Sequence record: PV231354.1
Reading direction: 5' to 3' (one strand)
Length of the DNA stretch: 64,000 bases
Below the pieces are notes generated by a model that was not told the DNA's origin, searched no databases, and was given only the letters and a program-made list of their open reading frames with translations. This document shows positions 12,719-59,684 of this stretch, piece by piece. How positions within the stretch are numbered: the first letter of the stretch is position 1; each line of letters opens with the position of its first letter. The position numbers were made by a program, and so were the translations under genes.

Positions 12719-12734
12719 GAAAAGGGCCTCCGGC

Positions 12735-12793
12735 GTTGTCGTCGAAGGCCCTTCTAGCGAGTCGGTGTCAGGCTGTCAACACTTGTCAGCCAG
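12735..12793 (-). promoter_or_regulatory. Early promoter with upstream element and leader
   Basis: CTGGC-N6-GTG-TTGACA-N17-TAGAAG then CGACGACAAC and GGAGG. Confidence 0.85.
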
Positions 12794-13394
12794 CGTCTTC
12801 CACCAGCCGCGCGATCCGCTCGAAGCCCAGTTCCAGGCGGCCCCAGAAGGCACCGGGCACGTGCGGCTTGACGACCTCGGTGAAGCGGGCGCGCTCCTTC
12901 AGGTACATCTTGGCCATGCCCAGATGCGGTGCGTTCGTCGCCGGGTCCTTGATCGAGGCCTCGACGTTGGCGATCCGATCGGCCAGCTTCAGGATGCAGG
13001 CCTCGGGGTGCTCGCCCAGCTTGCGGTAGATGTCCTCGTTGCGGGCCTTGCGGTTGGGGCCGATGCCCGACACCGCCCAGACCAGCGCCGCGACGCGCTC
13101 GCCGAACTTGTCCTCAACCATCTGCCGGCGGGCCTCGGGCGTCATGTCGAGGTGGGTGTCCTCGATCACGTCGTGCAGTTTGGCCGCCGCCGTCCAGGTG
13201 AAGCCCGCATAGCCGTAGTCGTCCAGGATGCGCTCGACCTTCTGGAGGTGGTAGAGGTAGGGCTGGCCGGCGTACTGCTGCTCGCCGTGCGCGGCGATGG
13301 CGAACTTCGTCGGGTCCTCCTGCTGGTAGGTGCCGGGGGCGTCCTCCATCAGGCTGGCCAGTTGATCGGGATCGGACAGGGGCGTGTCGGTCAT
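12786..13394 (-). CDS. RelA/SpoT-type HD hydrolase (small alarmone hydrolase-like)
   Basis: AHGEQQYAGQPYLYHL, AKLHDVIEDT, FGERVAALV, KLADRIAN. Confidence 0.85.
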   Translation of the reverse strand: MTDTPLSDPDQLASLMEDAPGTYQQEDPTKFAIAAHGEQQYAGQPYLYHLQKVERILDDYGYAGFTWTAAAKLHDVIEDTHLDMTPEARRQMVEDKFGERVAALVWAVSGIGPNRKARNEDIYRKLGEHPEACILKLADRIANVEASIKDPATNAPHLGMAKMYLKERARFTEVVKPHVPGAFWGRLELGFERIARLVEDAG

Positions 13395-13798
13395 GACGTT
13401 TTCTCGGGGATCAGGGTGAAGACCTCCACCCCCTCGTCGATGCGCATGTGGTGCGTCGGCGGGTGGGCGGGGTTGTAGCGGATGTAGCCGGCGAGGCCGC
13501 CGTCGATCATCGCGCCGCCGCGCTCCTGGTAGTCGTGGCGGAAGCGCGAGACCAGGAACGAGCCGTCGGCGAGCTTGATGGCCGAGAACACCGCCTCGCG
13601 GATCGAGGCCGCCGAGGTGATGTAGATGCCGTCCTTGAGCGGGTGGATGAAGAGGCCAAAGTAGTTGTCGTGGCCCTGCGAGCGATCCGGCGTCTCGGTG
13701 TAGAAGACGTAGAACGGCCCCTCCCGGTCCGGGAGGTCGTAGTAGCCCACGTACTTGGCGTTGTAGTGCTCTTCGGCGGCTTTGACGTTGATGCCCAT
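13391..13798 (-). CDS. hypothetical protein
   Basis: Coupled ORF. Confidence 0.7.
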   Translation of the reverse strand: MGINVKAAEEHYNAKYVGYYDLPDREGPFYVFYTETPDRSQGHDNYFGLFIHPLKDGIYITSAASIREAVFSAIKLADGSFLVSRFRHDYQERGGAMIDGGLAGYIRYNPAHPPTHHMRIDEGVEVFTLIPEKTS

Positions 13799-14298
13799 CA
13801 GGCGACCCTCAGAAATTCACCCCAGGCTGGGGCGGCGTATTTCAGGTAGGCCTCGTGCGCGGCCTCCGGCGTAGTATAGCGCCCCAGGAAGCGATAGACA
13901 CCATGAATGGTGATCTGGGCCTGGAACGGCTTGCTCTTGCACCGGCACTTGGTCACGCCCTTGGGCAGGGCGCCGATCGGGCGGCGGTTGACGAGGTTCT
14001 GAGACCGAGTCGCCTTCCGGAGGTTCTTGATCCGGTTGTTGCGGCGGTTGCAGTCCTCGTGGTCGACGTCATGGTCGGGGACGACCCCGTGGTGGAGCGC
14101 CCAGGCCAGCTTGTGGGCGGCGATCTGGATGCGGCGGCCCTCGAAAGGAACCTTGATCACCCGGTAGCCGTCCTGGTTGACCGTGCCCAGGCGCTTGCGG
14201 GTCTTGGAGCCCCGCAGGTAGATGGCGCCAGACGAAGCCTCGTAGCGGTAGCGCGCCTTGAGGTACTCGACCGGGATGACGTACTCTGCCCCCGACAT
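13798..14298 (-). CDS. HNH homing endonuclease with AP2-like domain
   Basis: AHKLAW, VDHEDCNRRNNRIKNLR; C-terminal KGV...FQAQI...LGRY...AHEAY. Confidence 0.88.
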   Translation of the reverse strand: MSGAEYVIPVEYLKARYRYEASSGAIYLRGSKTRKRLGTVNQDGYRVIKVPFEGRRIQIAAHKLAWALHHGVVPDHDVDHEDCNRRNNRIKNLRKATRSQNLVNRRPIGALPKGVTKCRCKSKPFQAQITIHGVYRFLGRYTTPEAAHEAYLKYAAPAWGEFLRVA

Positions 14299-14302
14299 GG
14301 GA

Positions 14303-14542
14303 TCAATCCTTCTTAGCGTGCCGCTTGAAGAGGAGATAGAAGAGGTAGGCGACCAGCACGCCGAGCCAGCAGAACCACAGGATCACCGCCTGCCCCAGGG
14401 TCATAAAGAAGAACCCGATCTTCCAGTCGTCGTTGAAACGGTTCTCCCGGTTCTCCCAGACCTTGGGGTAGTCGATGGCGTAGCGGTAGCCGATCCGGGC
14501 CAGCGCGATCAGGCCGCCCAGGATGAAATAGATGTCCTGCAT
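14303..14542 (-). CDS. Small membrane protein
   Basis: Two hydrophobic segments. Confidence 0.7.
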   Translation of the reverse strand: MQDIYFILGGLIALARIGYRYAIDYPKVWENRENRFNDDWKIGFFFMTLGQAVILWFCWLGVLVAYLFYLLFKRHAKKD

Positions 14543-14549
14543 GGCGGAC

Positions 14550-15885: not shown

Positions 15886-15888
15886 CGA

Positions 15889-17121: not shown

Positions 17122-17136
17122 GTGCTCCTCGCTGCC

Positions 17137-19509: not shown

Positions 19510-19793
19510 CAGCCCGCGAGCCCCCGCTGCTTCAAGGCGACGATCTGCTCGATCTCCTTGAGGATGTGCTCCGACAGGCGGTCGGTGCGCTCCTTGATGC
19601 CGGCCGGGACGCCGATCTTGCACTGGCCGATCTCGTGCAGGCGGTCGGAGACGGCCTTCAGATCGATCAGGGTGTCGCGGATCAGCACGTCGGCGAGGCT
19701 CAGGGCCTCGGACTGAAGCGCGGCGATACGCTGGGCGGTGGTGATCTCGGTGGTCGCCGGCACGACGGCGAGCTTGGTCTGGGAAGCGGTCAA
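19509..19793 (-). CDS. hypothetical protein
   Basis: TTG start after AAGGAG; first gene after a promoter. Confidence 0.72.
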   Translation of the reverse strand: MTASQTKLAVVPATTEITTAQRIAALQSEALSLADVLIRDTLIDLKAVSDRLHEIGQCKIGVPAGIKERTDRLSEHILKEIEQIVALKQRGLAG

Positions 19794-19806
19794 ATCGGGT
19801 CTCCTT

Positions 19807-19855
19807 GTTGTCGTCGGGCGTGACTTCTAGCCGGCGTCCGTGGGGCTGTCAACAC
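19807..19855 (-). promoter_or_regulatory. Early promoter with leader
   Basis: GTG-TTGACA-N17-TAGAAG, CGACGACAAC. Confidence 0.8.
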
Positions 19856-20392: not shown

Positions 20393-21292
20393 CTACCAGC
20401 CGAACTTGGTGGCGCAGACCGGGCCGATGCCGGCGTCGATCGAGGCGTGATTGGTCAGTTCCCGGCCGCAGCACGAGCAGGAGCCGGTGCGCTGTCCATA
20501 GGCGATGGCGGCGGCGTGCGGATCGGCCGCCAGGGCGAGGATTTCGGCTTCCTGCTCGGCGGTGCAGTCGCGCACCTTGAGGAACTTGCCGTTCATCACC
20601 TTGCCCATGTACACGCCCTCGACGGTGCGCACGTAGATGGCGCCGGCGTTGGTGCTGTCCATGGCGGCGGGCTTGAACTTGTAGCCGGCCAGCCGCAGGG
20701 TGATGTTCTTCAGGCCCGAGCCCTTGGCGTGGAAGAAGGCTTCCTCCAGCTTGGCGAGCGAGATGGCGGGCGCGGCGGCTTCGCGGGCGACCCGCTCGGC
20801 TTCGCGTTGGATCGCGCGCTTCTTGTCCTCGGCCGCCAGCCGCTGGACGGTGGCAAGCTGCTTCTCCGACAGGTGACCGTATTGCTCGACGGCCTGGAGC
20901 ATCTTGTGGGCGAAGTCAAAGCGCGGGGCGGTCTTGACCATCCACGTCATCTCCTCGGCGTGCGCCAGCTTCCAGGCGGCGCGCTGGGCTTGGAGATCAG
21001 CCACGGCCTGGGCCTTCTTCTTGTCGGCGTTGGCGCGGCGGCGGGCGCGTTCCTCGGGCGAGGTCTTGCGCACGAACTTGCCCTTGCCCTTGCAGACGAA
21101 GCACTGGCGGCCGTACTGCGACATGCCGCGATACGTGCCCGTGCCCCGGCACTTGGGGCAGAGTTCGATCCACTCGGCCGGCGGCGGGGTCTCGTCGACG
21201 AAATCGACGCCCGCTTCCATGGGCTCACCCGGCTGGGTTTCCCGGACCACCGGCTCGGTGATCAGTTCATCCATATCAGCGAAAAGGTCCAC
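20393..21292 (-). CDS. Zn-finger phage protein (DUF6011-like C-terminus)
   Basis: CPKCRGTG...CFVCKGKG; C-terminal CSCCGRELT...GIGPVC. Confidence 0.8.
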   Translation of the reverse strand: MDLFADMDELITEPVVRETQPGEPMEAGVDFVDETPPPAEWIELCPKCRGTGTYRGMSQYGRQCFVCKGKGKFVRKTSPEERARRRANADKKKAQAVADLQAQRAAWKLAHAEEMTWMVKTAPRFDFAHKMLQAVEQYGHLSEKQLATVQRLAAEDKKRAIQREAERVAREAAAPAISLAKLEEAFFHAKGSGLKNITLRLAGYKFKPAAMDSTNAGAIYVRTVEGVYMGKVMNGKFLKVRDCTAEQEAEILALAADPHAAAIAYGQRTGSCSCCGRELTNHASIDAGIGPVCATKFGW

Positions 21293-21299
21293 GGCGGGT

Positions 21300-21365
21300 C
21301 TCCATCAGCAGGTGATGGAGCCCTTCTAGGCCTCTCGACCTAGCCTGTCAACACTCTCGCGCCAA
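21300..21365 (-). promoter_or_regulatory. Early promoter with 8-bp palindrome over start site/RBS
   Basis: TTGGC-N6-GTG-TTGACA-N17-TAGAAG; CTCCATCA-N5-TGATGGAG. Confidence 0.8.
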
Positions 21366-24251: not shown

Positions 24252-24616
24252 CAGGCCGACACCTTCGCCAGTTGCTTTTCCAGTTCGGCGCGCAGTTCGG
24301 CGTCGGTCAGGCCCAGGCGCTCCTTCATGAACGCCACGGCGTCAGCCGGGTTGTCGAAGGAGCGGGTGTCCGCATCGGTGCTGTCGCGCAGGCCACGCAC
24401 CTCGGTCACGCCCCAGAAAGTCCCCCAGGCGCTCGCGACGACGGCCGCCAGCGCTACGAAGAACGCGCCGCCAAACTGGTGCGCGTCAGCGCGCTCGATC
24501 AGTTCGGCGCCGGCGAAGGACACGGCGATGAGCGCCACCGCAGCCAGATGCAGCATGGCGCTCTTGCGCGTGTAGGTCGGGGTCACCTTGAGGGTGAACT
24601 TGTCGCTGGTCTCCAA
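24251..24616 (-). CDS. Membrane protein
   Basis: Two hydrophobic segments; first gene after a promoter. Confidence 0.7.
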   Translation of the reverse strand: METSDKFTLKVTPTYTRKSAMLHLAAVALIAVSFAGAELIERADAHQFGGAFFVALAAVVASAWGTFWGVTEVRGLRDSTDADTRSFDNPADAVAFMKERLGLTDAELRAELEKQLAKVSA

Positions 24617-24633
24617 GAGAGGTCTCCTCTGTC

Positions 24634-24691
24634 GTTGTCGTCGAGGGGCTTATAGGCGGAGGTCAGCGACCTGTCAACACTCTCACGCCAA
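24634..24691 (-). promoter_or_regulatory. Early promoter with upstream element and leader
   Basis: TTGGC-N6-GTG-TTGACA-N17-TATAAG, CGACGACAAC. Confidence 0.85.
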
Positions 24692-26095: not shown

Positions 26096-26424
26096 TTCTT
26101 GCCCCTCGGACGATTGTTCTCGAACCACGCGTGCCACTCGGCCTTGGTCATCCAGGGCTGGGTGCGGTGGGCGTTGTAGAGGGCAAGGCCCTCCTCGGTG
26201 ACGGTGTAGAACTTCGAGCCGCGCTCCATGTGTGGCATGCGCTGCTCGGACTTGGCGAGACCACGCTTTTCGAGCTTGGCCAGGGTCGCCGAATGGTGCG
26301 AGCCGTTCGAGCCGCCGACATCCATGGTGCGGTGTCGGCGGATCGGCTCATCGCGGAAGGACGGGATCAGGCACCCCAGGACCTCCCAGTCGCGGTCGGT
26401 CAGTGGGGACAGGCGTCGGGTCAT
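26092..26424 (-). CDS. Small winged-helix-like protein
   Basis: LTDRDWEVL...TLAKLEKRGLA...YTVTEEG. Confidence 0.6.
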   Translation of the reverse strand: MTRRLSPLTDRDWEVLGCLIPSFRDEPIRRHRTMDVGGSNGSHHSATLAKLEKRGLAKSEQRMPHMERGSKFYTVTEEGLALYNAHRTQPWMTKAEWHAWFENNRPRGKK

Positions 26425-26437
26425 CGCGGTCTCCAGA

Positions 26438-26495
26438 TTGTCGTCGTCTCGACATCTAGGAGGCTTTTCCGAGTCTGTCAACACAATCACGCCAG
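26438..26495 (-). promoter_or_regulatory. Early promoter with upstream element
   Basis: CTGGC-N6-GTG-TTGACA-N17-TAGATG, CGACGACAA. Confidence 0.82.
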
Positions 26496-27815: not shown

Positions 27816-28120
27816 CGGCGGACCACCGGCATGGTCTGGATCGAGAAATCGACGTGCTTGTGGTTGCAATGCCCCGCGCCCGGTTGGATCGCCTCCAGGG
27901 CGTCCTCGGTCCCGCGCTCCCAGGCGTCGCGCGCGGCGTAGACTTCCGAGGGCTTGGCCGAGGGGTCCACGCTGGGCATCTGGTAGCGGCGGGAGATCAC
28001 GCTGTTCAGCTTGGTGACGACGTCCTCGGCGTGCGCCAAGTCGGCGAACGCGGTGAGGTTGGTGACGCCGCCGGCGTCGTAGTCGCGGTCATCCATGACC
28101 AGAATGTAGACGGTGTCCAC
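27812..28120 (-). CDS. hypothetical protein
   Basis: First gene after a promoter; GGAGG RBS. Confidence 0.72.
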   Translation of the reverse strand: MDTVYILVMDDRDYDAGGVTNLTAFADLAHAEDVVTKLNSVISRRYQMPSVDPSAKPSEVYAARDAWERGTEDALEAIQPGAGHCNHKHVDFSIQTMPVVRR

Positions 28121-28133
28121 GTGGGCCTCCTTC

Positions 28134-28178
28134 GTTGTCGTCGGAGGCCTTCCTAGACTGGCGCGAGTGTGTTGTCAA
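28134..28178 (-). promoter_or_regulatory. Early promoter with inverted element in spacer
   Basis: TTGACA-ACACACTCGCGCCAGTC-TAGGAA, CGACGACAAC. Confidence 0.82.
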
Positions 28179-29500: not shown

Positions 29501-29775
29501 CAGGCCCTCTGCTTGGTCACGGCGGCGTACACGACGTCGATCATCATACCCAGGGTCGTGTCCTGGTCGGGGAAGTCCTCGGGAAGTTCGATGAAGAACT
29601 CCTCCTCCAGCGACATCGCCAGATCGACAAAGTCGAGGCTGTCGAACCGCAGGTCCGGACCGAGACGCAGGTCCTTGTGGTAGTCGTCCAGAACGATGGG
29701 CGTCTCGCTCATCATGTGCGCGAATTCGTACACCGCGATCTGGACTTCACTCCACGTGACTTTTGTATCGGCCAA
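29500..29775 (-). CDS. acpP: Acyl carrier protein
   Basis: DLRFDSLDFVDLAMSLEEEFFIELPE phosphopantetheine-site motif; acidic, 91 aa. Confidence 0.87.
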   Translation of the reverse strand: MADTKVTWSEVQIAVYEFAHMMSETPIVLDDYHKDLRLGPDLRFDSLDFVDLAMSLEEEFFIELPEDFPDQDTTLGMMIDVVYAAVTKQRA

Positions 29776-29803
29776 GGACTTCCCCTTCTGCTGCTGCCCG
29801 GCG

Positions 29804-29846
29804 CTTCTAGCGAAGCTTCACCAGGACGTCAACACTCTAACGCCAG
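29804..29846 (-). promoter_or_regulatory. Early promoter for ACP gene
   Basis: CTGGC-N6-GTG-TTGACG-N17-TAGAAG. Confidence 0.78.
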
Positions 29847-32106: not shown

Positions 32107-32675
32107 GCCGTGATCTCCTCGAAGCGGCCGTCCATGAACTCGGCCTCGCGCCGGCCCCAGACCTGCCCGCCGCCGTCGATGTAGGTCAGCAGGGTCTCGT
32201 CGTCCTGGATCGGGGTCTCGCACTGGATGCGAATGGTCCCCACCACGGCATAATCGGAGCCCCGCTTCTTGTGGCGGAACCGGCGCATGCCGCGCGGCAG
32301 TTCGGCCAGGAAGGCTTTCAGGGCGTCGGCCATCTTGGCGACGCCGTGCGGGAAGTGCGAGCCCGGTCCTCGGACCCATTGATAGACCGTCGCCAGGGCA
32401 AAGCGCCCGGCGGCGATCTCGCCCGTGGGGTCCTTGCGCAGGACGTCCGGCGCGTGCTCTTGCAGGTAGTTGGTGCTGACGATCGCCTGCATCCGAGCCT
32501 CCTCGACATTGGTCGGGGGCTTCAGATACCCAGCCGGCGTCGAGGTCTCCAGACGCTTGATCGTCTCGTCGATCAGCTTGGCGCTGTCCTGGTGGAAGGA
32601 CTTCAGCCCGCCGCCGTAGATGGAAGCGCTGCTGCGGTGCCAGTCGCGTAGGAGGATGAGAGGGTCTTGATCCAT
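32103..32675 (-). CDS. hypothetical protein with DUF1653-like C-terminal domain
   Basis: FRHKKRGSDYAVV...YIDGGGQVWGRREAEFMDGRF. Confidence 0.7.
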   Translation of the reverse strand: MDQDPLILLRDWHRSSASIYGGGLKSFHQDSAKLIDETIKRLETSTPAGYLKPPTNVEEARMQAIVSTNYLQEHAPDVLRKDPTGEIAAGRFALATVYQWVRGPGSHFPHGVAKMADALKAFLAELPRGMRRFRHKKRGSDYAVVGTIRIQCETPIQDDETLLTYIDGGGQVWGRREAEFMDGRFEEITA

Positions 32676-32686
32676 CGGAGCCTTTC

Positions 32687-32734
32687 GTGTCGTCGGCCGT
32701 GACTTTAGAGGGTCACGGCCGAGCCTGTCAACAC
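32687..32734 (-). promoter_or_regulatory. Promoter with 10-bp inverted repeat around -10
   Basis: GTG-TTGACA-N18-TAAAGT; CGGCCGTGAC-N8-GTCACGGCCG. Confidence 0.72.
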
Positions 32735-34824: not shown

Positions 34825-34837
34825 CGGGGCCTCCTTG

Positions 34838-34896
34838 GTTGTCGTCGACGCTCCCTATAGACCCGGCCTGTCAGCCTGTCAACACTCGACAGCCAA
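34838..34896 (-). promoter_or_regulatory. Early promoter with upstream element and leader
   Basis: TTGGC-N6-GTG-TTGACA-N17-TATAGG, CGACGACAAC. Confidence 0.85.
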
Positions 34897-39146: not shown

Positions 39147-39158
39147 GGGAACTCCTCT

Positions 39159-39218
39159 ATGTCGTCGTCTCGACCCTTCTAGGTGGAGGTTCCCGTTCTG
39201 TCAACACACAACCGCCAA
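39159..39218 (-). promoter_or_regulatory. Early promoter with upstream element
   Basis: TTGGC-N6-GTG-TTGACA-N17-TAGAAG, CGACGACA. Confidence 0.83.
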
Positions 39219-39224: not shown

Positions 39225-39257
39225 AAAAAGAAACCGCCGACCCGAAGGCCGGCGGTT
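39225..39257 (-). terminator. Rho-independent terminator
   Basis: AACCGCCG-GCC-TTCG-GGT-CGGCGGTT (C-UUCG-G loop) then TCTTTTT. Confidence 0.88.
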
Positions 39258-42415: not shown

Positions 42416-42601
42416 CTACTCCTGTTCTGCTTTGGCGGGACGCCGGCTTCTGGACTGACGCGGGACGAACACCAGGGCGACGGTCGAGCCGCCGGTGTAC
42501 TTGGTGCGGCGGCTATAGAGCCAACCGCCCTCGATTTCCAGGCGCTCGGTCACCTGACCATCGCCCTCGTCGATCTTTTCCCATTTCGTCTTCTTGGCCA
42601 T
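42416..42601 (-). CDS. Small hypothetical protein
   Basis: GAGGAG RBS; TERLEIEGGWLY. Confidence 0.72.
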   Translation of the reverse strand: MAKKTKWEKIDEGDGQVTERLEIEGGWLYSRRTKYTGGSTVALVFVPRQSRSRRPAKAEQE

Positions 42602-42603
42602 GA

Positions 42604-42653
42604 CGCTCCTCGATTTTCGCCGGCACCCTAGAGGAGCGCCGATGTGTTGACAA
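42604..42653 (-). promoter_or_regulatory. Leftward promoter of divergent pair
   Basis: TTGTCA-N17-TAGGGT with an 8-bp inverted repeat covering the RBS. Confidence 0.68.
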
Positions 42654-42666
42654 GCGCCAAATGGCT

Positions 42667-42724
42667 CTGGCTGGCGAGTGTTGACAAGGCGGCGGTGGTC
42701 CCTTAGAAGGGCGGCGACGACAAC
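42667..42724 (+). promoter_or_regulatory. Rightward promoter of divergent pair
   Basis: CTGGC-N6-GTG-TTGACA-N17-TAGAAG, CGACGACAAC. Confidence 0.85.
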
Positions 42725-42738
42725 GAAAGGAGGCGCCG

Positions 42739-43038
42739 ATGCGCTACGTTCTGGAGTACATGGACTGCGACGACCAGATCGTCCAGGTCGACTTCGAAGC
42801 CCCCACCCGCGCCTCGGCGATCGCCAAGGCCAAGCGCCTCTTCGTGAAGGCGGTCGAGGCCAGCGGCCGGTCGATCTTCACCGGCTACATGTTCGAGGAC
42901 CACTCGATCACCATGAAGGTGAAGCTGGTCCCGTTCGGCACCCTGAGCCGCTACCTGGGCCTGGGCAAGGTCACCGCCGCTAACATCTCGTTCGACGACC
43001 GCGACGCCAAGATCGCCCGCCAGGACATGGCCGCATGA
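42739..43038 (+). CDS. hypothetical protein
   Basis: GGAGG RBS; first gene after a promoter. Confidence 0.75.
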   Translation: MRYVLEYMDCDDQIVQVDFEAPTRASAIAKAKRLFVKAVEASGRSIFTGYMFEDHSITMKVKLVPFGTLSRYLGLGKVTAANISFDDRDAKIARQDMAA

Positions 43039-44632: not shown

Positions 44633-44682
44633 GAGTGTTGACAGTCTCGCCGCGCCCGGCTACAAGCCTCCTCGACGACAAC
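44624..44682 (+). promoter_or_regulatory. Early promoter with upstream element and leader
   Basis: TTGGC-N6-GTG-TTGACA-N17-TACAAG, CGACGACAAC. Confidence 0.85.
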
Positions 44683-44696
44683 GCAAGGAGCCTGTC

Positions 44697-45860
44697 TTGA
44701 CCGATTTCCCGATCATCCGCGCCGCCATTGAAGGCCGCCGCGCCGCTGGTTTCGACACCGTCCTGGCCAACGCCGACGCCTTCGCTGCCGAGGGCGTGCT
44801 GATCAAGGCCGAGTTCGAGGACATCAAGGGCGTCTTCAGCCGCTGCCTCTCCGACGCCTGGGAAGTCGTGCGCAAGCGCCACTTCTTCATCGACCACGCC
44901 CTGCGCTCCAAGGAAGTCGAGGACCTCTTCTGGAGCTTCTCGATCCCCTATCCGCACGTCATGCCGGGCTTCCTGAAGAAGACCCTGGCGGCCAAGAACA
45001 TCCCGGCCAACGTCCGCGAAGACCTCGTGGCCCTGTTCAACGAGGGCATCGCCCTCAACGACAAGCTGGTGGCACTCAAGCCTCTGATCGGCAAGCGCGC
45101 GCCCAAGAAGACCAAGGTCGAGATCGAGCGCGAGGGCAAGGAACGCACCTGCCAAATCTGCGGTCGCGGCATCCTGGCCGAGGGCGGCATCATCGCCCAC
45201 CACGGCTACACCCGCCCCTACGAGGGCTGGCAGACCGCCTCCTGCTCTGGCGCCCGCGAGGTTCCGTTCGAACTGAGCCGCGACGAACTGGGCAAAGAGA
45301 TCGCCGCCCTGAAGGCGTGGCGCGTGCGCAAGGTGAACGAGCGCGCGGCGATCGAAGCCGAGACCGTCAAGCTGATCCTGAAGTATCAGGTCTCCGAGCA
45401 GGACCCGCGCAAGGCGCAGGGCTTCAAGCTGACCGTCGATCGCCAGATCGAAGTCACCCGCGACACCTTCGAGGCCCTGAAGGTCTCCACGCCCGAGGCC
45501 TTCTCGGGCAAGTACAACCCCCGCAAGGAGGGCAAGTACACCTACGAGGCCCTGACCTTCGACGGCCTGAAAGAGCAGGCCCTGGGCATGGTCGACATCG
45601 AGATCGGCCGCCTGGACAACGACATCCTGCGCCAGCAGGCCCGCTATGACGCCTGGAGCCAGAAGGCGATCTTCGCCAAGGGCCGCTATTGGTTCATCGG
45701 TGATGAGGTCCAGACCGCCGACGGCGCGGTGGGCAGCATCAAGGGCTTCTACCAGCACTATCCGCCGCAGCCGGGCGACGTCGCGGGCGGCGTGCGTCTC
45801 GGGGCCGAGACCAGCGGTTTCGTCTCCTGGAACGTCGAGAGCCTGGAGCCGGTGGCCTGA
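44697..45860 (+). CDS. hypothetical protein with CxxC/HGY/C metal motif
   Basis: TCQICGR...AHHGY...SCSG. Confidence 0.78.
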   Translation: MTDFPIIRAAIEGRRAAGFDTVLANADAFAAEGVLIKAEFEDIKGVFSRCLSDAWEVVRKRHFFIDHALRSKEVEDLFWSFSIPYPHVMPGFLKKTLAAKNIPANVREDLVALFNEGIALNDKLVALKPLIGKRAPKKTKVEIEREGKERTCQICGRGILAEGGIIAHHGYTRPYEGWQTASCSGAREVPFELSRDELGKEIAALKAWRVRKVNERAAIEAETVKLILKYQVSEQDPRKAQGFKLTVDRQIEVTRDTFEALKVSTPEAFSGKYNPRKEGKYTYEALTFDGLKEQALGMVDIEIGRLDNDILRQQARYDAWSQKAIFAKGRYWFIGDEVQTADGAVGSIKGFYQHYPPQPGDVAGGVRLGAETSGFVSWNVESLEPVA

Positions 45861-47713: not shown

Positions 47714-47783
47714 TTGGCGTTAGAGTGTTGACAGTCATTGGGGCCTCCTCTATATCCACCCTCGACGACAACGAGGAGGCCCC
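47714..47783 (+). promoter_or_regulatory. Early promoter with upstream element, leader and 11-bp inverted repeat
   Basis: TTGGC-N6-GTG-TTGACA-N17-TATATC; GGGGCCTCCTC...GAGGAGGCCCC. Confidence 0.87.
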
Positions 47784-47784
47784 G

Positions 47785-49533
47785 ATGACGACCGAGACCA
47801 TGACCCTGAGCTTCCGTATCGAAGGCGCCGCCCTGGTGGAGCGCGCCCGCGACCGGGTCATCGAAGGCGCCTGGGAGCATGGCCTGCGCATCCTCGTCGA
47901 GGGTCTGCACGGCATGACCTACGAGATCGCCATCGACATCCTGATGGGCAAGTACACCCTGGGCGGCTGGTCCTCGGACCCCGAGGGCGTCTACCTCACC
48001 GAGCAAGACCCCGAGGACGAGACCTTCAAGCGCTACAAGGAGACGTTCGACTTCCAGTTCGCCGGCGTCTTCAAGGACGAGACGGGCCGCATCATGCGCC
48101 CCTACGCCATCGTCGACAGCTACGGCAAGAAGGACTTCGACTCCAAGTACCGCTACGACCACGCCCGCGCGCGCGGCTCGGACGAGTTCCTGTCGCGCCC
48201 GGTGCGCTACCACGACATCCTGGGCAAGGACCCGATCGACTGGGCCTATCGCGCCCTGCATTACGCCAACCTGCCGCAGCAAGACATCGTCAAGCGGGTC
48301 AAGAACCCCGGCGAATACCACGGCACGATCCAGGAGATGGCCGCGCTATTCGAGGTCATCCACGACTACCCCAAGCTCCTGCTGCCCTACGTCACCAACA
48401 GCGCCCAGGAGGCCGTCGACAAAGCGGTCGCCTCCGGCCGCCGGATGGAGAAGCGCGGCTATGTCCACGAGTACGGCCCCAATGATCCGTTCGCTGAGTT
48501 CCACGCCGTGACGACCACGGCGATCGACAACTTGCCGCCCCAGTGGGTGATCGAGAACCAAGCCTATGAGCCCCCGGCGCCGGTCAAGGCCCTGGAGGAC
48601 TTCAAGCAGGGCGTCGCGAGCGCCCCTGATGAGGTCTCGGCGATGAACCGGATGATCGTCAAGGAGGTCAACGCCGGCACGAGCATGTCGACCGCCATCG
48701 CCCTGGCCCGCGCCAAGATGGCGCTGATGGGTGGCATGGCCGAGGACCCTGAAGAGCGCATGTCGGCGATTAACGCCCACTTGGCGGCGGAGGCCGAGCG
48801 CGCCGAAGGCAAGTCCAACGAGACCTACCGCAAGGCGATCCAGGAGCAGGCCGCCGGCGACTACTTCGATCTCGTGTACACGGGTAAGGGTGGCGAGGAG
48901 GTGACCCTGAAGGTCCCGACCGCGCCGTTCGAGAAGTGGTGCCTGTGGCGCACCGCCGGCGCTCACCTCGCCAAGCCGTGGAAGCGCGTCACCTATTCGG
49001 GTCTGAAGTGCTTCGGCGACGACCCCTATCACACCGACTGGGTCATCGGCGCGGGCCTGGAGCCCGAGGATTGGCCGACCCGCAGCGACGACCCGCTGCA
49101 CAAGGCCGCCTGGGACAAGCGCTTCGAGGTCGCCCAGAGCAAGATGGGCGGCAATCTGGTGGTCCTGCTGGGCACGGGCTTCGTGACCGGCAAGATCAAG
49201 CACCTCAAGCCGGGCGAGACCCTGGAGCGGGGGCAGATCGGCGTGATCCGCAACGCTGGCCCCGACTACGTCCAGGCCGCCGTCAGCGCGATCGACAACA
49301 ACGCCGCCCTGATCACCGAGAACGGCGGCAACGTCGCCCACCTCGTCACCGAGTTCCGGGACAAGCCGCTGCGTCTGGTGCGCATCGCCGACGCCCGCAA
49401 GATTTTCAAGGACGGCATGGAGGTCGACCTCGACCTGGATAAGGCATGGCGCCGTATCTACGAAGGCTCGCGCGGTCCCGCGCCGGGTGACCTCTACCTG
49501 CCGCCGGAATGGGAGATTCAAGATGACGCATGA
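47785..49533 (+). CDS. Large protein with C-terminal PEP-utiliser phospho-His swivel domain
   Basis: ALITENGGNVAHLVTEFRD...ARKIFKDGMEVDLD; start moved to MTTETM. Confidence 0.72.
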   Translation: MTTETMTLSFRIEGAALVERARDRVIEGAWEHGLRILVEGLHGMTYEIAIDILMGKYTLGGWSSDPEGVYLTEQDPEDETFKRYKETFDFQFAGVFKDETGRIMRPYAIVDSYGKKDFDSKYRYDHARARGSDEFLSRPVRYHDILGKDPIDWAYRALHYANLPQQDIVKRVKNPGEYHGTIQEMAALFEVIHDYPKLLLPYVTNSAQEAVDKAVASGRRMEKRGYVHEYGPNDPFAEFHAVTTTAIDNLPPQWVIENQAYEPPAPVKALEDFKQGVASAPDEVSAMNRMIVKEVNAGTSMSTAIALARAKMALMGGMAEDPEERMSAINAHLAAEAERAEGKSNETYRKAIQEQAAGDYFDLVYTGKGGEEVTLKVPTAPFEKWCLWRTAGAHLAKPWKRVTYSGLKCFGDDPYHTDWVIGAGLEPEDWPTRSDDPLHKAAWDKRFEVAQSKMGGNLVVLLGTGFVTGKIKHLKPGETLERGQIGVIRNAGPDYVQAAVSAIDNNAALITENGGNVAHLVTEFRDKPLRLVRIADARKIFKDGMEVDLDLDKAWRRIYEGSRGPAPGDLYLPPEWEIQDDA

Positions 49534-51284: not shown

Positions 51285-51508
51285 TCGACTACGTCTACCG
51301 CAAAGACCCGCGCGGCAGCGACTACGGCGCCCAGCGGATGGACCTGAGTGAAGCCCTGGCGGTGGTCGCGGCCGAGAAGCAGGACTTCCTCATTCGCTTG
51401 GTCGAGGTCCTGCACGAGAACAACCTCCTGCGCGACGCCGACGTGCTGGAGTTGCTCGGCAAGGGCTGGGGCCTGGAGGCCTACGACGTCCTGTACGTAG
51501 ACGATTGA
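51281..51508 (+). CDS. hypothetical protein
   Basis: GTGA overlap. Confidence 0.65.
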   Translation: MIDYVYRKDPRGSDYGAQRMDLSEALAVVAAEKQDFLIRLVEVLHENNLLRDADVLELLGKGWGLEAYDVLYVDD

Positions 51509-51549
51509 CAACACTCTCGCGCCAGCATAGAAGCCTTCTCGACGACAAC
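51505..51549 (+). promoter_or_regulatory. Early promoter with inverted element in spacer
   Basis: TTGACA-ACACTCTCGCGCCAGCA-TAGAAG, CGACGACAAC. Confidence 0.85.
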
Positions 51550-51562
51550 GAAGGAGGCTTCC

Positions 51563-51934
51563 GTGAAGCTCGCGACCCAAGACCGGACCGATCCCCGCCT
51601 GAACGCCGACTACCGCCTGATCAAGGCGGTCTTCTACTACGGCGGCCCGGCCGAGTACCCGATCCACCTGGACGAACGCTGGAGTGCGGTGACGCCGGCC
51701 CAGGTCGAGGACCAGATTTCGGTCCTCTGCCGCGACCTCGCCAAATGCGCGGGCAACACCCTGGCGCCGGCGACCTTCTACGAGCGCGCCAAGCTGAGCT
51801 TCGCCGAGGTGCCGCCGGTGTCCGACGAGTTCTGGGGCCTGATCTCCGAGACCACCAAGCAGAACATCCTCGCCCTGAAGGATCGCTTCACCGTCCACGG
51901 CAGCGGCTTCATGCTCTCGTGGGCCAAGGTCTGA
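51563..51934 (+). CDS. hypothetical protein
   Basis: GGAGG RBS. Confidence 0.72.
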   Translation: MKLATQDRTDPRLNADYRLIKAVFYYGGPAEYPIHLDERWSAVTPAQVEDQISVLCRDLAKCAGNTLAPATFYERAKLSFAEVPPVSDEFWGLISETTKQNILALKDRFTVHGSGFMLSWAKV

Positions 51935-52977: not shown

Positions 52978-53036
52978 TTGGCCGTCTTGTGTTGACAAAG
53001 GCAGGTTCGCCGGCCTAGAACGTCATCGACGACAAC
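52978..53036 (+). promoter_or_regulatory. Early promoter with upstream element and leader
   Basis: TTGGC-N6-GTG-TTGACA-N18-TAGAAC, CGACGACAAC. Confidence 0.83.
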
Positions 53037-53048
53037 AAAGGAGGCCCC

Positions 53049-53405
53049 ATGCCGCTGTATGATTTCCCGACCGGCCCGACCACGATGGAAGACATCGAAG
53101 CGTTCGTCGCCGGCGCCCAGGCGGTGGTCAACGCCCAGATGGCGAAGACCTTCCCGAACGTGAGCCCGCCGGTCCTGACGATCGAGCCGGTGCGCGCCAA
53201 CAGCCAGTTCGCCAAGATCGTGGCAAGCGACCGCGCCCAGCGCTCGGTCTGGGCGTTCGTTCGCCTGGAGAACGGCCTGATCTACAAGCCTTCCTCCTGG
53301 AAGGTCCCGGCCAAGCACGCGCGCGGCACCATCCACTCCGCTGGCCACGGCGCCGAGTACGTCGACTGGACCGGCCCGCGCTACATCAAGGACATGCGCC
53401 CGTGA
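53049..53405 (+). CDS. Phage hypothetical protein
   Basis: SVWAFV...GLIYKPSSWKVPAKHARG. Confidence 0.75.
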   Translation: MPLYDFPTGPTTMEDIEAFVAGAQAVVNAQMAKTFPNVSPPVLTIEPVRANSQFAKIVASDRAQRSVWAFVRLENGLIYKPSSWKVPAKHARGTIHSAGHGAEYVDWTGPRYIKDMRP

Positions 53406-57244: not shown

Positions 57245-57245
57245 C

Positions 57246-57785: not shown

Positions 57786-58315
57786 GCGAGGAGGCCTGGG
57801 ACAGCCTGATCCTCGACCTGCGCAACGCTGTCGAGGCCGAGGATCGCGAGGCCTGGGACGAGGCGATCCAGGCCCTGGAGAACGCCTTCGACGAGCATGT
57901 CGACGGCCCGCTGGAGACCCACCCCAACACCCTGGCCTGGAAGAAGAGCGCCGACGAACGCAAGCGCTTCCTGGCGGGCTGGTCGTACTGGGGTAGCGGC
58001 GCCCGCGATGTGCCGGCCGAGTACAAGGGCGACATGATCTTCAATCGGGGCCGCAGCGCCGCCGCCACCGCCCAGGACATGAGCGGCCTGCACCGGACCC
58101 TGGCGTCCTGCAAGCATCCGCAGTCCTACCGGATCGAAGGCGGCGACAATCTCCACCTGCCGCGCTACCCGGCGGTCTATGGCTCCTACGAGGTCCACAT
58201 CTGCCGCCTCTGTCGCGGGTGGAAGACGATCGGCCACGGCGAGCGCCAATGGCACGAGGGGCCGTATTTCGACGCCTACGAGAAGGCGATGCGTGAGGAA
58301 GAGGAGCGCTGCTGA
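57776..58315 (+). CDS. hypothetical protein
   Basis: Coupled ORF; C...H...CxxC. Confidence 0.68.
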   Translation: MALSEEAWDSLILDLRNAVEAEDREAWDEAIQALENAFDEHVDGPLETHPNTLAWKKSADERKRFLAGWSYWGSGARDVPAEYKGDMIFNRGRSAAATAQDMSGLHRTLASCKHPQSYRIEGGDNLHLPRYPAVYGSYEVHICRLCRGWKTIGHGERQWHEGPYFDAYEKAMREEEERC

Positions 58316-59007
58316 TGCTCTACGTGTTCGGGGACATCCACGGCCGCATGGACCTGCTGGAGAAAGCGCGCCACGTCATCCGTGTACGCGGCGACGCCAC
58401 CCGCCTGATCTTCCTGGGCGACTATGTCGATCGCGGTCCGCAGAGCCGCGAGGTGGTCGAGGCCGTGATGGAGCTTCACCGCCAGGGCGAGATCGCCCTC
58501 AAAGGCAACCACGAGCAGATGATGGTCGATAGCTGGCGGATCGCCAACTACGGCGCGCTCTCCAAGATGTGGGTCAGCAATGGCGGCAAGCAGACCCTGA
58601 AGTCCTACGGCGCCGGCGACAACGCCTGGAACGCCCAGTGGGACATGATCCCCCAGGAGCATATCGACTGGATGGACGGCCTGCCGACCATGCACGTCGC
58701 GCCCGGCCGGGTCTTCGTGCATGCCGGGCTGATGCCGGGCATCCCGCTTGATCAGCAGGACGAGGAGTGGACCCTGTGGATCAGAGACCGCTTCCTGCTG
58801 GGCAAGCCGGGCGACTTCACCCACCACGTGATCCACGGCCACACCCACACCGTGCCGGTCTTCAAGGAGGAGCCGTCCGAGCCGGAGCTTCTGCCCCACC
58901 GGACCAACCTCGACACCGGCGCGTTCTTCACCGGCGTCCTGGGCGTGGGCGTTTTCGATCCGAACGAGACCGCCGGCCCGGTCGAGGTGCTCAAGATCAC
59001 GGTGTGA
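58315..59007 (+). CDS. Calcineurin-like Ser/Thr protein phosphatase (lambda NinI/PPP type)
   Basis: GDIHG, GDYVDRG, GNHE, HAG, HGHT, DTG. Confidence 0.93.
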   Translation: MLYVFGDIHGRMDLLEKARHVIRVRGDATRLIFLGDYVDRGPQSREVVEAVMELHRQGEIALKGNHEQMMVDSWRIANYGALSKMWVSNGGKQTLKSYGAGDNAWNAQWDMIPQEHIDWMDGLPTMHVAPGRVFVHAGLMPGIPLDQQDEEWTLWIRDRFLLGKPGDFTHHVIHGHTHTVPVFKEEPSEPELLPHRTNLDTGAFFTGVLGVGVFDPNETAGPVEVLKITV

Positions 59008-59009
59008 CG

Positions 59010-59624
59010 ATGTCGTTTCTGGACCGCATGCGCGAGTACATCACGGCCGACCTGAAGATCGTGGAGCACCTCACCCGCCGGTTCAGCCGGAAGCCGGAGG
59101 AGCCCGTGACCGGGATCGCGCCCCAGCCGATGACGCCGAACTGGGGCAACGTTCTTCCGCAATTGCCTCAGGCCGGCGTCGGCGGTGGTGGTGGGGCATC
59201 GCACTTCTACTACCCCGGCGTCGGCGGTGGTGGCGGCTATGTGAGTGGCGGCTCCGGCGGTGGGGCCAGCGGCACATCGGGGCAGGTCCTGGCCTACGAC
59301 GGCCAGAACGCGGCCTGGAGGCCCGCCCCAGTCCCCACGAAGGTGAAGGCCAACAAGCCGGCGGGGAGCTTCAAGGACCTCAACGCGACCGAGGAGGCGG
59401 TGGTCCACAATGTTGCCCAGTACGAGGGGACAGAACTCGTGCGCGAGAAGGACGGGATGTTCTCCTATTGTCGCAACGGCGTGGCCCTGGCCCAGGACCG
59501 CGTCCGCTCCCGCACGGTCAACGTGTTGATCAAAAAGAAGTTTCTGGACGTGATCGAGTTCGGGGAGCGCGGCGAGGCCCTGGTCTGCGGGCTCGACTCC
59601 AACATCATGGTCCACGGCCGCTAG
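59010..59624 (+). CDS. hypothetical protein with Gly-rich linker
   Basis: Start MSFLDR; (A/P)GVGGGG repeated twice. Confidence 0.68.
   Translation: MSFLDRMREYITADLKIVEHLTRRFSRKPEEPVTGIAPQPMTPNWGNVLPQLPQAGVGGGGGASHFYYPGVGGGGGYVSGGSGGGASGTSGQVLAYDGQNAAWRPAPVPTKVKANKPAGSFKDLNATEEAVVHNVAQYEGTELVREKDGMFSYCRNGVALAQDRVRSRTVNVLIKKKFLDVIEFGERGEALVCGLDSNIMVHGR
59173..59233 (+). repeat. 19-nt direct repeat (2 copies)
   Basis: CCGGCGTCGGCGGTGGTGG at 59173 and 59215. Confidence 0.7.
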
Positions 59625-59631
59625 AAAGTGT

Positions 59632-59684
59632 TTGACAACACTCTCACGCCAACATAGAACCCTCCTCGACGACAACGAGGAGGG
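59632..59684 (+). promoter_or_regulatory. Early promoter with inverted element in spacer and 9-bp anti-SD repeat
   Basis: TTGACA-ACACTCTCACGCCAACA-TAGAAC; CCCTCCTCG-ACGACAA-CGAGGAGGG. Confidence 0.87.

What the first reader, a model, noticed from the sequence alone, without database searches (positions are those of the whole stretch)
12722..59684. Anti-Shine-Dalgarno inverted repeats span the transcription start: RBS hidden in read-through mRNA, free in locally initiated mRNA
Seen: at many promoters a sequence complementary to the first gene's SD sits at or before the -10/+1 region. Pairs: 47740-47750/47773-47783 (11 bp perfect), 59660-59668/59676-59684 (9 bp), 42604-42611/42631-42638 (8 bp), 28124-28130/28143-28149 (7 bp), 12722-12728/12747-12753 (7 bp, adjoining the SD), 51530-51538/51553-51561 (9 bp with one G-U), and 39147-39155/39185-39194 (one bulge). 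The arms differ between promoters but keep complementarity. Established: T4 uses this logic for a few genes (e, soc, 49). Inference: here it is systematic, so the lead gene of each unit is translated only when its own promoter fires. Alternatively the repeats are DNA hairpins that modulate open-complex formation.
Basis: partly seen in the sequence, partly recalled or inferred. Interest (0 to 1): 0.7.

Follow-up and report, generated by a model that had tools for sequence, protein, structure and literature searches.

The report
Promoter-embedded hairpins hiding ribosome sites
In a Caulobacter jumbo phage, about a third to a half of a family of near-identical promoters carry a short sequence that would fold back on the first gene's ribosome-binding site only in RNA arriving from upstream. 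This is a predicted, still untested repeat of a trick known from a few phage T4 genes.

Summary
The window is the early/replication region of a CcrRogue/RBC63-like Caulobacter phage (phiCbK group). It holds 18 near-identical promoter cassettes: gTG-TTGACA-N17-TAGAAG-N6-8-CGACGACAAC-GGAGG-start.

All seven reported pairs are present as written. Two are longer than reported: 47785 has 16 positions including the AUG, and 12718 has 10 bp. An eighth pair (21292) was missed.

The set is far beyond chance:
- 8 of 18 lead genes, against 3 of 109 internal genes, have a perfect complement of 7 bp or more to the ribosome site within the preceding 42 nt.
- 0.56 per 18 is expected from shuffles.
- No downstream complement reaches 6 bp.

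The predicted cost of opening the ribosome site is about 18 kcal/mol in read-through RNA. It is about 6 kcal/mol in RNA started 7 nt after the -10. The 47785 helix keeps pairing across two phage genera through several double changes.

The feature is not systematic. Only six promoters are strong and two are moderate. 42601 has no upstream unit, and 39146 follows a real terminator. Another conserved hairpin (32675) spans the -10 without touching the SD. No TSS or translation data exist.

Best reading: T4 e/soc-type transcript-specific masking, a new instance, unproven.

The parts
47728..47788 (+). Cassette P47785. -35 at 47728-47733, -10 (TATATC) at 47751-47756, predicted +1 near 47763. The 5' arm is 47735-47750, inside the spacer. 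The 3' arm is 47773-47788 (SD plus AUG). Start codon at 47785.
   Evidence: MFE -34.9 kcal/mol, z -7.5; 16-position helix covarying in 7 phages
59632..59691 (+). Cassette P59689. -35 at 59632-59637, -10 (TAGAAC) at 59655-59660, predicted +1 near 59667. The 5' arm is 59660-59668 and the 3' arm is 59676-59684 (CGAGGAGGG). The loop is ACGACAA. Start codon at 59689.
   Evidence: z -4.2; 8 pairs invariant, terminal pair uninformative
51505..51565 (+). Cassette P51563. -35 at 51505-51510, -10 at 51528-51533, predicted +1 near 51540. The 5' arm is 51530-51538 and the 3' arm is 51553-51561 (9 bp, one G-U). GTG start at 51563.
   Evidence: z -2.5; the arm is replaced in CcrBL10 yet still pairs with GGAGGC
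12716..12779 (-). Cassette P12718. -35 at 12779-12774, -10 at 12756-12751, predicted +1 near 12744. The 5' arm is 12753-12744 and the 3' arm is 12731-12722 (10 bp, one G-U, covers GGAGG). ATG at 12718.
   Evidence: U-G versus C-G alternates among 6 phages; z -4.2
28118..28178 (-). Cassette P28120. -35 at 28178-28173, -10 at 28155-28150. The 5' arm is 28149-28143 and the 3' arm is 28130-28124. GTG at 28120. The upstream gene's stop codon ends 3 nt before the 5' arm.
   Evidence: z -3.4
21290..21351 (-). The 5' arm is 21320-21313 (CUCCAUCA) and the 3' arm is 21307-21300 (UGAUGGAG). GTG at 21292.
   Evidence: z -3.4
39144..39204 (-). Cassette P39146. The 5' arm is 39195-39185, in the spacer. The 3' arm is 39155-39146 (bulged, reaches the GTG). 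Masking is moderate, and the helix is lost or altered in CcrRogue, CcrBL10 and the phiCbK group.
   Evidence: 11.7 kcal/mol; z -3.2
42599..42653 (-). Cassette P42601, the first leftward promoter at the divergent point. -35 is TTGTCA at 42653-42648. The 5' arm is 42638-42631 and the 3' arm is 42611-42604. The structure is weak, and no upstream unit lies on the same strand.
   Evidence: 9.5 kcal/mol; z -1.5
32673..32731 (-). Cassette P32675. It has an 11-bp hairpin, 32722-32712 with 32703-32693, that flanks the -10 and ends at the predicted +1. It does not involve the SD.
   Evidence: (92.7% of cells paired, 3 pairs changed on both sides, slid controls 22-46%)
39232..39257 (-). Canonical intrinsic terminator (11-bp stem, 4-nt loop, U run) just upstream of cassette P39146. 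It is the only convincing terminator in the window.
   Evidence: background-level hits elsewhere
42681..42741 (+). Cassette P42739, the first rightward promoter. No anti-SD arm.
44638..44699 (+). Cassette P44697. Only 5 bp (CUCCU/AGGAG). The match is lost in the phiCbK group.
52992..53051 (+). Cassette P53049. No arm in this window. The CcrBL10 orthologue has a new 8-bp helix, CAUGCGGG/CCCGCAUG, that covers the AUG.
61073..61132 (+). Cassette P61130. No arm.
34822..34882 (-). Cassette P34824. No arm in this window. The BL57 orthologue has a 7-bp arm, and the Karma and phiCbK orthologues have a bulged one.
29773..29832 (-). Cassette P29775 (-35 is TTGACG, different leader). No arm.
26422..26481 (-). 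Cassette P26424. No arm of 7 bp or more.
24614..24677 (-). Cassette P24616. No upstream arm. The own leader contains a small SD-containing hairpin, AGAGG-AGA-CCUCU.
19791..19852 (-). Cassette P19793. No arm; this is the most open ribosome site of the set.

Best explanation
The window carries a family of host-type (sigma-73-like) promoter cassettes packed into 55-70-nt gaps between early genes, with no terminator in front of them except at one site. In six cassettes clearly (12718, 21292, 28120, 47785, 51563, 59689) and two weakly (39146, 42601), a stretch complementary to the lead gene's SD, and often its start codon, lies in the -35/-10 spacer or between the -10 and +1.

RNA made from an upstream promoter contains both arms. 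It folds into a 7-16-bp helix that buries the ribosome-binding site. RNA started at the cassette's own promoter begins inside or after the 5' arm. It carries only the short leader (G)ACGACAAC-SD and is open to ribosomes. The lead gene is therefore translated mainly from its own promoter's transcripts. This is the logic established for T4 genes e, soc, 49 and I-TevI.

Shown here: the repeats, their excess over chance, their upstream-only placement, the predicted energy switch, and conservation with some covariation.

Inferred: the promoter's activity and TSS, the existence and amount of read-through RNA, and any effect on translation.
For: - Cassette anatomy and regular spacing. The -35 TTGACA and -10 (GC)TAGAAG/C fit the Caulobacter sigma-73 consensus TTGaCg / GCtANAWC quoted in PMC13004042.
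- Enrichment: 8 of 18 lead genes against 3 of 109 internal genes, with 0.56 per 18 expected. Cognate versus non-cognate permutation gives p = 5e-5 to 4.5e-4. The same holds in CcrRogue, CcrBL10 and Karma.
- Read-through RNA from -58 to +6 is unusually structured: mean z -1.95 against -0.09 at internal starts. Tool folds give z from -2.5 to -7.5.
- Predicted own transcripts are slightly less structured than shuffles in 16 of 18 cases.
- Opening energy of -14..+3 is 18.3 kcal/mol in read-through RNA and 5.7 in local RNA. Six cassettes exceed the 99th percentile of internal genes.
- The complement is always upstream: no downstream match reaches 6 bp. The 5' arms end between -17 and +3 relative to the predicted TSS.
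- Conservation across two genera at four promoters.
- The 47785 helix keeps 13-16 of 16 positions paired in 7 phages. Positions 7, 8, 12, 14 and 16 show changes on both sides.
- Arms turn over while pairing is kept or regained: 51563 and 53049 in CcrBL10, 34824 in BL57.
- There are no terminator-like sites ahead of the cassettes except at 39257-39232.
- In phiCbK infection RNA libraries, assembled contigs of 23-44 kb run straight through three orthologous cassettes.
- The T4 precedent is described in PMC3014915.
Against: - Only a third to a half of the cassettes have the feature. Ten of 18 are at background.
- Upstream and local promoters share one consensus, so no temporal switch is apparent.
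- 42601 has no upstream unit on its strand. 39146 follows a terminator.
- At 28120 a ribosome terminating 3 nt upstream should melt the helix.
- Several orthologues have lost the pairing: 39146 in CcrRogue, CcrBL10 and the phiCbK group; 42601 in CcrBL10; 51563 is weakened in Karma.
- Covariation is thin outside 47785. The 59689 helix is invariant and its terminal pair is uninformative. 12718 shows only a G-U/G-C alternation.
- Part of the signal is built into the family consensus CCUCCUCG-ACGACAA-CGAGGAGG: 8-16% of non-cognate pairs reach 7 bp.
- The test restricted to sequence after the SD core is marginal (p = 0.03-0.10).
- The 32675 hairpin shows that selection can keep a promoter-spanning helix that does not touch the SD.
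- No TSS, ribosome or reporter data exist. The RNA contigs have no direction or local depth and could include DNA.
Confidence: 0.5

Rival explanations
1. The helices do form in read-through RNA, but their main job is something other than promoter-specific translation. Three versions are possible:
- They leave the lead gene untranslated so that Rho ends the read-through. This would insulate transcription units without terminators.
- They act as 3'-end or processing structures for the upstream message.
- At sites like 28120, they enforce translational coupling to the upstream gene.
For: - Canonical terminators are almost absent between units.
- The conserved, covarying 32675 hairpin lies 13 nt after the upstream stop codon and does not involve the SD.
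- At 28120 the upstream stop codon abuts the 5' arm.
- Upstream and downstream promoters are of the same class, so a temporal switch has no obvious use.
Against: - Hairpins lying wholly upstream of the SD are rare: three orthologue groups, against ten or more groups that pair with the ribosome site.
- None of the helices is followed by a U run.
- Stems of 7-16 bp are short for RNase III, by general knowledge.
- No data bear on Rho or on processing.
Confidence: 0.2
2. The inverted repeats act in DNA. Either they extrude as cruciforms or hairpins, or they are bound as palindromes. Either way they would tune open-complex formation at the promoter they straddle.
For: - Every repeat straddles the -10/+1 region.
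- The 32675 repeat flanks the -10 and has no link to the SD.
- 42601 has a repeat although no read-through RNA is expected there.
Against: - Loops are long (5-29 nt, mostly 12-22), which disfavours cruciform extrusion.
- Arm sequences differ from site to site, so one sequence-specific protein is unlikely.
- The 3' arm is almost always the SD and/or start codon, which has no meaning in DNA.
- Wobble positions are G-U on the mRNA-sense strand at 12718, 51563 and 47785. On the other strand these would be A-C mismatches.
- Spacer-located 5' arms stay double-stranded in an open complex, by general knowledge.
Confidence: 0.12
3. The repeats are a by-product. The cassettes are paralogous copies of one ancestral module. 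Its C-rich stretch between the -10 and +1 would be kept for promoter kinetics, as in stringent promoters. That stretch happens to complement the G-rich SD. The longer matches would then be chance or inheritance.
For: - A subset has the palindromic consensus CCUCCUCG-ACGACAA-CGAGGAGG.
- Non-cognate pairs reach 7 bp in 8-16% of cases.
- The test restricted to sequence after the SD core is only marginal.
- Half of the cassettes lack the feature, and several orthologues lost it.
Against: - Cognate pairs clearly exceed non-cognate ones.
- Three arms lie in the -35/-10 spacer, not the discriminator.
- Arms extend into idiosyncratic sequence up to and including the start codon.
- There are double-sided changes at 47785, and new arms at 53049 (CcrBL10) and 34824 (BL57).
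- Complements are strictly upstream-only.
Confidence: 0.08

Closest known systems
Phage T4 genes e (lysozyme), soc, 49 and I-TevI: ribosome site sequestered in long early transcripts, freed in transcripts from a late promoter lying in the 5' part of the helix (Uzan & Miller 2010, PMC3014915)
   Same: The SD and/or AUG is buried in a helix whose 5' strand is encoded at or upstream of a promoter placed immediately before the ribosome site. Transcripts from that promoter lack the 5' strand.
   Different: - In T4 the outer and inner promoters belong to different temporal classes (early/middle versus gp55 late), which gives timing. Here all promoters share one host-type consensus.
- Here the feature recurs at 6-8 cassettes of one repeated module, in a high-GC Caulobacter siphophage.
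- Nothing has been shown experimentally here.
Translational coupling through RBS-sequestering helices opened by an upstream ribosome (e.g. RNA phage MS2 coat/replicase; many operons). Recalled from general knowledge.
   Same: A helix occludes a downstream ribosome site in polycistronic RNA. At 28120 the upstream stop codon is 3 nt from the 5' arm, so coupling would be expected there.
   Different: At the other sites the stop codon is 21-82 nt from the arm, beyond the reach of a terminating ribosome. A promoter sits inside the structure.
Repeated start-associated motifs in other phages (e.g. SAS/ESAS of Cluster K mycobacteriophages). Recalled from memory, not tested.
   Same: A conserved short motif repeated just upstream of many gene starts in one phage group, sometimes with nearby inverted repeats.
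   Different: Here the repeated unit is a complete promoter plus leader. The inverted repeat pairs with the SD. No sequence relation was examined.
Caulobacter sigma-73 housekeeping promoters (TTGaCg / GCtANAWC; PMC13004042)
   Same: -35 TTGACA, 17-bp spacer, -10 (GC)TAGAAG/C.
   Different: These cassettes are much closer to one another than host promoters are. They have a fixed gTG before the -35 and a fixed CGACGACAAC at the predicted +1.

Membership tests
T4-type promoter-embedded RBS-masking helix (e, soc, 49, I-TevI) | In the longer transcript the SD and/or start codon lies in a stable helix | tested here: met
   Prediction only. Six cassettes have opening energies of 18-28 kcal/mol for -14..+3, above the 99th percentile of 109 internal genes. 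Folds give z from -2.5 to -7.5.
T4-type promoter-embedded RBS-masking helix (e, soc, 49, I-TevI) | A promoter is placed so that its transcripts lack the 5' strand of the helix | tested here: inconclusive
   Consensus hexamers place +1 at or after the end of every 5' arm (-17 to +3). No mapped 5' ends exist. Public RNA data gave only direction-less contigs.
T4-type promoter-embedded RBS-masking helix (e, soc, 49, I-TevI) | Longer transcripts from an upstream promoter really cross the site | tested here: inconclusive
   No terminator precedes 17 of the 18 cassettes. RNA-library contigs of 23-44 kb cross three orthologous cassettes in phiCbK, but DNA carry-over cannot be excluded. 42601 has no upstream unit.
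T4-type promoter-embedded RBS-masking helix (e, soc, 49, I-TevI) | Translation is low from the long transcript and high from the short one | not testable with these tools
   This needs reporters, toeprinting or ribosome profiling.
T4-type promoter-embedded RBS-masking helix (e, soc, 49, I-TevI) | Outer and inner promoters belong to different temporal classes (this gives the timing function in T4) | tested here: not met
   All 18 cassettes share one consensus. Per-gene timing from the phiCbK time course could not be read because the table was cut in storage.
Intrinsic (Rho-independent) terminator | GC-rich hairpin followed directly by a U run | tested here: not met
   None of the anti-SD helices is followed by a T run. 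The scan reports only 39257-39232 as a convincing terminator.
Operator or protein-binding palindrome | The same half-site sequence recurs at all sites, with short fixed spacing | tested here: not met
   Arms differ between sites and the spacing varies from 5 to 29 nt.
Known RNA families (Rfam 15) | A match at the gathering score | tested here: not met
   No match anywhere in the window.
Sigma-70/sigma-73 housekeeping promoter | -35 TTGACA-like, 16-18-bp spacer, -10 TANNNN fitting the host consensus | tested here: met
   Sixteen cassettes have an exact TTGACA, with a 17-bp spacer (18 bp in two) and TAGAAG/C-like -10. The host consensus is quoted in PMC13004042. The E. coli-type scan misses them because the last -10 base is not T. 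Activity was not tested.

The most novel reading that the evidence does not exclude
The phiCbK-like phages use a modular promoter cassette with a built-in translational insulator. In a genome almost free of terminators, each tandem host-type promoter hides its lead gene's ribosome site from RNA arriving from upstream. Lead-gene output then depends only on its own promoter. The untranslated read-through is perhaps handed to Rho. This would be a terminator-free way of separating transcription units, evolving by arm turnover in the promoter spacer and discriminator.
Probability: 0.15. Interest if true: 0.7.

Novelty: new member of a known kind. Interest (0 to 1): 0.5.

Why it matters
If confirmed, this would extend a mechanism known from a handful of T4 genes. 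It would become a recurrent design element of a whole promoter family in an unrelated, high-GC jumbo phage of a major model bacterium. It would also show that the variable parts of a promoter (spacer and discriminator) can double as a translational control strand.

It gives a concrete, cheap test set for Caulobacter phage gene expression. There are six strong sites, ten natural negative controls within the same cassette family, and natural variants in related phages.

It also flags the cassette itself. This cassette, with its conserved CGACGACAAC leader, was not described in the phiCbK genome paper (PMC3556154) or in the other papers searched.

Tried and rejected
- TSS or read evidence. The window is held only by wastewater metatranscriptome contigs. 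A Karma locus found the phiCbK infection RNA-seq runs, but they are kept only as assembled contigs. These run through the cassettes and break at repeated cassette copies, so they carry no 5'-end information.
- Per-gene temporal classes from McLaughlin et al. 2023. The phage sheets of S3 Table were cut off in storage.
- Distant metagenomic relatives (L008-L016). They have no uniform cassette, so they are unusable for statistics. One site had CCUCC/GGAGG after a -10.
- Mismatch-type test (G-U versus A-C) across 94 cassettes, to tell RNA from DNA. There were too few imperfect helices to be informative.
- Covariation at 59689. The helix is invariant, so the test says nothing.
- MAFFT misaligned the 3' arms of 47785 between genera. 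The pair count was redone in register by script.
- Simple SD 'fraction unpaired' did not separate lead genes from internal genes. Opening energy with a truncation control did.
- Functions of the masked lead genes. All are unknown in Pfam and PHROGs apart from a DUF6011 tail.
- Rfam: no match.
- Intrinsic-terminator reading of the helices: rejected, because there are no U runs.

Full report
WHAT THE WINDOW IS. The 64-kb window is 99.98% identical to Caulobacter phage RBC63, positions about 123.9-187.9 kb. It is closely related to CcrRogue (97%) and CcrBL10 (86%), and more distantly to the phiCbK, Karma, Magneto and Swift group (about 78%). GC content is 66%. Genes run leftward from 42601 to the start of the window and rightward from 42739 to its end. 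Most are small genes of unknown function, mixed with replication and nucleotide-metabolism genes.

THE PROMOTER CASSETTE. Almost every gap of 25 nt or more in front of a gene holds the same module: gTG-TTGACA, 17 nt (18 in two cases), TAGAAG or a close variant, 6-8 nt, CGACGACAAC, 1-6 nt, GGAGG, 5-8 nt, start codon.
- I count 18 such cassettes.
- The hexamers fit the Caulobacter sigma-73 consensus TTGaCg / GCtANAWC, as quoted in PMC13004042.
- An E. coli-type scan misses them because the sixth -10 base is G or C rather than T.
- With the usual 7-nt distance from the -10 (general knowledge), the predicted +1 falls on the first bases of CGACGACAAC. The predicted leader is therefore only about 22 nt.
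- In IMG/VR the exact cassette occurs 13-16 times per genome in CcrRogue, Karma and CcrBL10, and only as scattered single hits elsewhere.
- The phiCbK genome paper does not describe it (PMC3556154). I found no paper that does.

THE OBSERVATION. All seven pairs are in the sequence at the stated coordinates.
- Two are longer than reported. At 12718 the helix is 10 bp and covers GGAGG. At 47785 it has 16 paired positions and includes the AUG.
- An eighth, at 21292, was not listed.
- The 5' arms fall in two places. Three lie inside the -35/-10 spacer (47785, 39146, 42601). Five run from the last bases of the -10 to about +1 (12718, 28120, 51563, 59689, 21292).
- Relative to the predicted TSS the arms end between -17 and +3.

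IS IT MORE THAN CHANCE? Yes, as a set.
- A perfect complement of 7 bp or more between -60..-19 and -18..+3 is present at 8 of 18 promoter-led genes and at 3 of 109 internal genes (Fisher p = 4e-6). Dinucleotide shuffles of the upstream part give 0.56 per 18, and never more than 4.
- The cassettes share a consensus that is itself partly palindromic (CCUCCUCG-ACGACAA-CGAGGAGG). I therefore also paired each upstream part with the ribosome sites of the other 17 cassettes. Cognate pairs are longer and more stable (permutation p = 5e-5 to 4.5e-4).
- The same holds for cassettes collected from CcrRogue, CcrBL10 and Karma.
- Restricted to sequence after the SD core, the test is only marginal (p = 0.03-0.10). 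Much of the signal therefore involves the SD core itself.
- The complement is found only upstream. In the 42 nt downstream of the start codon no match reaches 6 bp.
- Hairpins that lie wholly upstream of the SD region are rare: three orthologue groups.

PREDICTED CONSEQUENCE.
- As read-through RNA, the stretch -58..+6 is much more structured at cassettes than at internal gene starts: mean z -1.95 against -0.09, p = 1e-4. Individual folds give z from -2.5 to -7.5, except 42601 at -1.5.
- For the eight arm-bearing cassettes, making -14..+3 single-stranded costs 18.3 kcal/mol in read-through RNA and 5.7 kcal/mol in RNA that starts at the predicted +1.
- For cassettes without arms the figures are 8.1 and 6.0. 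For internal genes truncated in the same way they are 8.8 and 8.0.
- Six cassettes exceed the 99th percentile of internal genes.
- The predicted own transcripts are, if anything, less structured than shuffles in 16 of 18 cases.

COMPARISON WITH RELATED PHAGES. Orthologous cassettes were aligned from CcrRogue, CcrBL10, Karma, phiCbK, Ccr10 and BL57.
- The masking is kept across both genera at 12718, 47785, 51563 and 59689, and within the Rogue genus at 21292 and 28120.
- At 47785 the helix keeps 13-16 of 16 positions paired in seven phages although both arms change. C-G becomes A-U at position 7. G-C becomes A-U or G-U at position 8. Positions 12, 14 and 16, opposite the start-codon region, also change on both sides. 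Sliding the partner drops pairing from 92% to 51-61%.
- At 12718 the only variable arm position alternates between U-G and C-G.
- At 59689 eight pairs never vary and the terminal pair is uninformative.
- Arms also turn over. CcrBL10 has a different 5' arm at 51563 that still pairs with GGAGGC, and a new 8-bp helix over the AUG at 53049. BL57 has a 7-bp arm at 34824 where this window has none.
- Pairing has decayed at 39146 (CcrRogue, CcrBL10, phiCbK group), at 42601 (CcrBL10), and partly at 51563 (Karma).

- Ten of 18 cassettes have nothing, so the feature is gene-specific and not systematic.
- 42601 is the first promoter of the leftward block, and no unit on the same strand lies upstream of it.
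- 39146 is preceded by the one convincing intrinsic terminator of the window, 39257-39232.
- At 28120 the upstream stop codon ends 3 nt before the 5' arm. A terminating ribosome should open the helix, which would be coupling rather than a block.
- All cassettes belong to one promoter class, so the early/late timing that gives the T4 examples their purpose is not evident.
- Cassette 32675 has an 11-bp hairpin that flanks the -10 and ends at +1 without touching the SD. It is 93% paired in five phages, with three pairs changed on both sides. Selection can therefore keep promoter-spanning helices for some other reason.

READ-THROUGH AND TSS EVIDENCE.
- Terminator-like sites are at or below shuffle expectation, and none precedes a cassette other than 39146. 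Upstream genes end 3-82 nt before the 5' arms.
- In RNA libraries of phiCbK-infected cells, assembled contigs of 23-44 kb cross three orthologous cassettes without a break. This is compatible with read-through. However, the contigs have no direction and no local depth, and they may contain DNA.
- No run with raw reads of an infected culture was available.
- The TSS positions are therefore predictions from the consensus.

VERDICT. The repeats are real, non-random and placed exactly where only RNA from upstream would contain both arms. The most economical explanation is the T4 e/soc/49/I-TevI mechanism (PMC3014915), recurring at six to eight cassettes of one promoter family. I give this 0.5.

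The main rivals are:
- The same RNA helices serving insulation, processing or coupling (0.2).
- A DNA-level role at the promoter (0.12). This is disfavoured by long and variable loops, site-specific arm sequences, the constant involvement of the SD/AUG, and G-U pairs on the sense strand.
- A by-product of a palindromic family consensus (0.08).

The kind of mechanism is known. Its recurrence in a host-type promoter cassette of Caulobacter jumbo phages appears undescribed. It is directly testable with 5'-end mapping, ribosome profiling and compensatory-mutation reporters.

Noticed in passing
14 of the 18 cassettes, e.g. window 47763-47772, 59667-59676, 51540-51549, 12744-12735 (-): The decamer CGACGACAAC is conserved right at the predicted transcription start, between the -10 and the SD. 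Its CG...CG ends close the loop ACGACAA in the palindromic subset of cassettes. Its own function is unknown; it could be an initial transcribed sequence, a factor site or a leader element. In IMG/VR the exact cassette is multi-copy only in phiCbK-like phages.
   Followed up: partly
window 28172-28156 (-), 51511-51527 (+), 59638-59654 (+): Three cassettes share an almost identical -35/-10 spacer, ACAC(U/A)CUCGCGCCAg..., which is also seen in Karma and CcrBL10 copies. A spacer conserved this well suggests a regulator site within a sub-family of the promoters.
   Followed up: no
window 32693-32722 (-): An 11-bp hairpin flanks the -10 of cassette P32675 and covaries across five phages (3 double changes). 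It does not involve the SD. It is kept even where the downstream gene differs between phages.
   Followed up: yes
window 39232-39257 (-): A canonical intrinsic terminator (11-bp stem, U run) lies between the long gene ending at 39278 and cassette P39146. It is the only convincing terminator in 64 kb.
   Followed up: partly
window 42602-42738: The divergent control region has two GTGTTGACAAG boxes (42647, 42681). Each reads as a -35-like hexamer on both strands (TTGACA / TTGTCA). One serves P42739 rightward and one serves P42601 leftward.
   Followed up: partly
window 4810, 5081, 10746, 12720, 24422, 29915, 36866, 36894, 39225-39226: The window differs from RBC63 almost only by one-base length changes in homopolymer runs. 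Three of them break reading frames annotated in RBC63 (5055-5319, 24406-24616, 29905-30502). This looks like sequencing or assembly noise rather than biology. One change (12720) alters the SD-to-ATG spacing of P12718 by one base.
   Followed up: partly
window 10735-10762 (-) and 4770-4798 (-): A second promoter-like type, AAGCG-TTGACA-AAGCCGG, has different downstream sequence. At 10762 the annotated GTG start overlaps the -10-like hexamer, so the start codon or the promoter call is doubtful.
   Followed up: no
window 24617-24637 (-): The leader of P24616 contains a small hairpin, AGAGG-AGA-CCUCU, that includes its own SD and would be present in the locally initiated RNA as well. It is unchanged in CcrRogue and CcrBL10.
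   Followed up: no
window 25597-25670 (+): ARAGORN calls a tRNA-Ala(UGC) inside, and antisense to, the 470-aa gene at 24683-26095. It is probably a false call.
   Followed up: no
L008:12444-12510 (+), IMGVR_UViG_3300046660_000488: In a distant metagenomic relative, one promoter-like site has CCUCC directly after the -10 and GGAGG before the ATG. This is the same geometry as in the window, but a single case.
   Followed up: no
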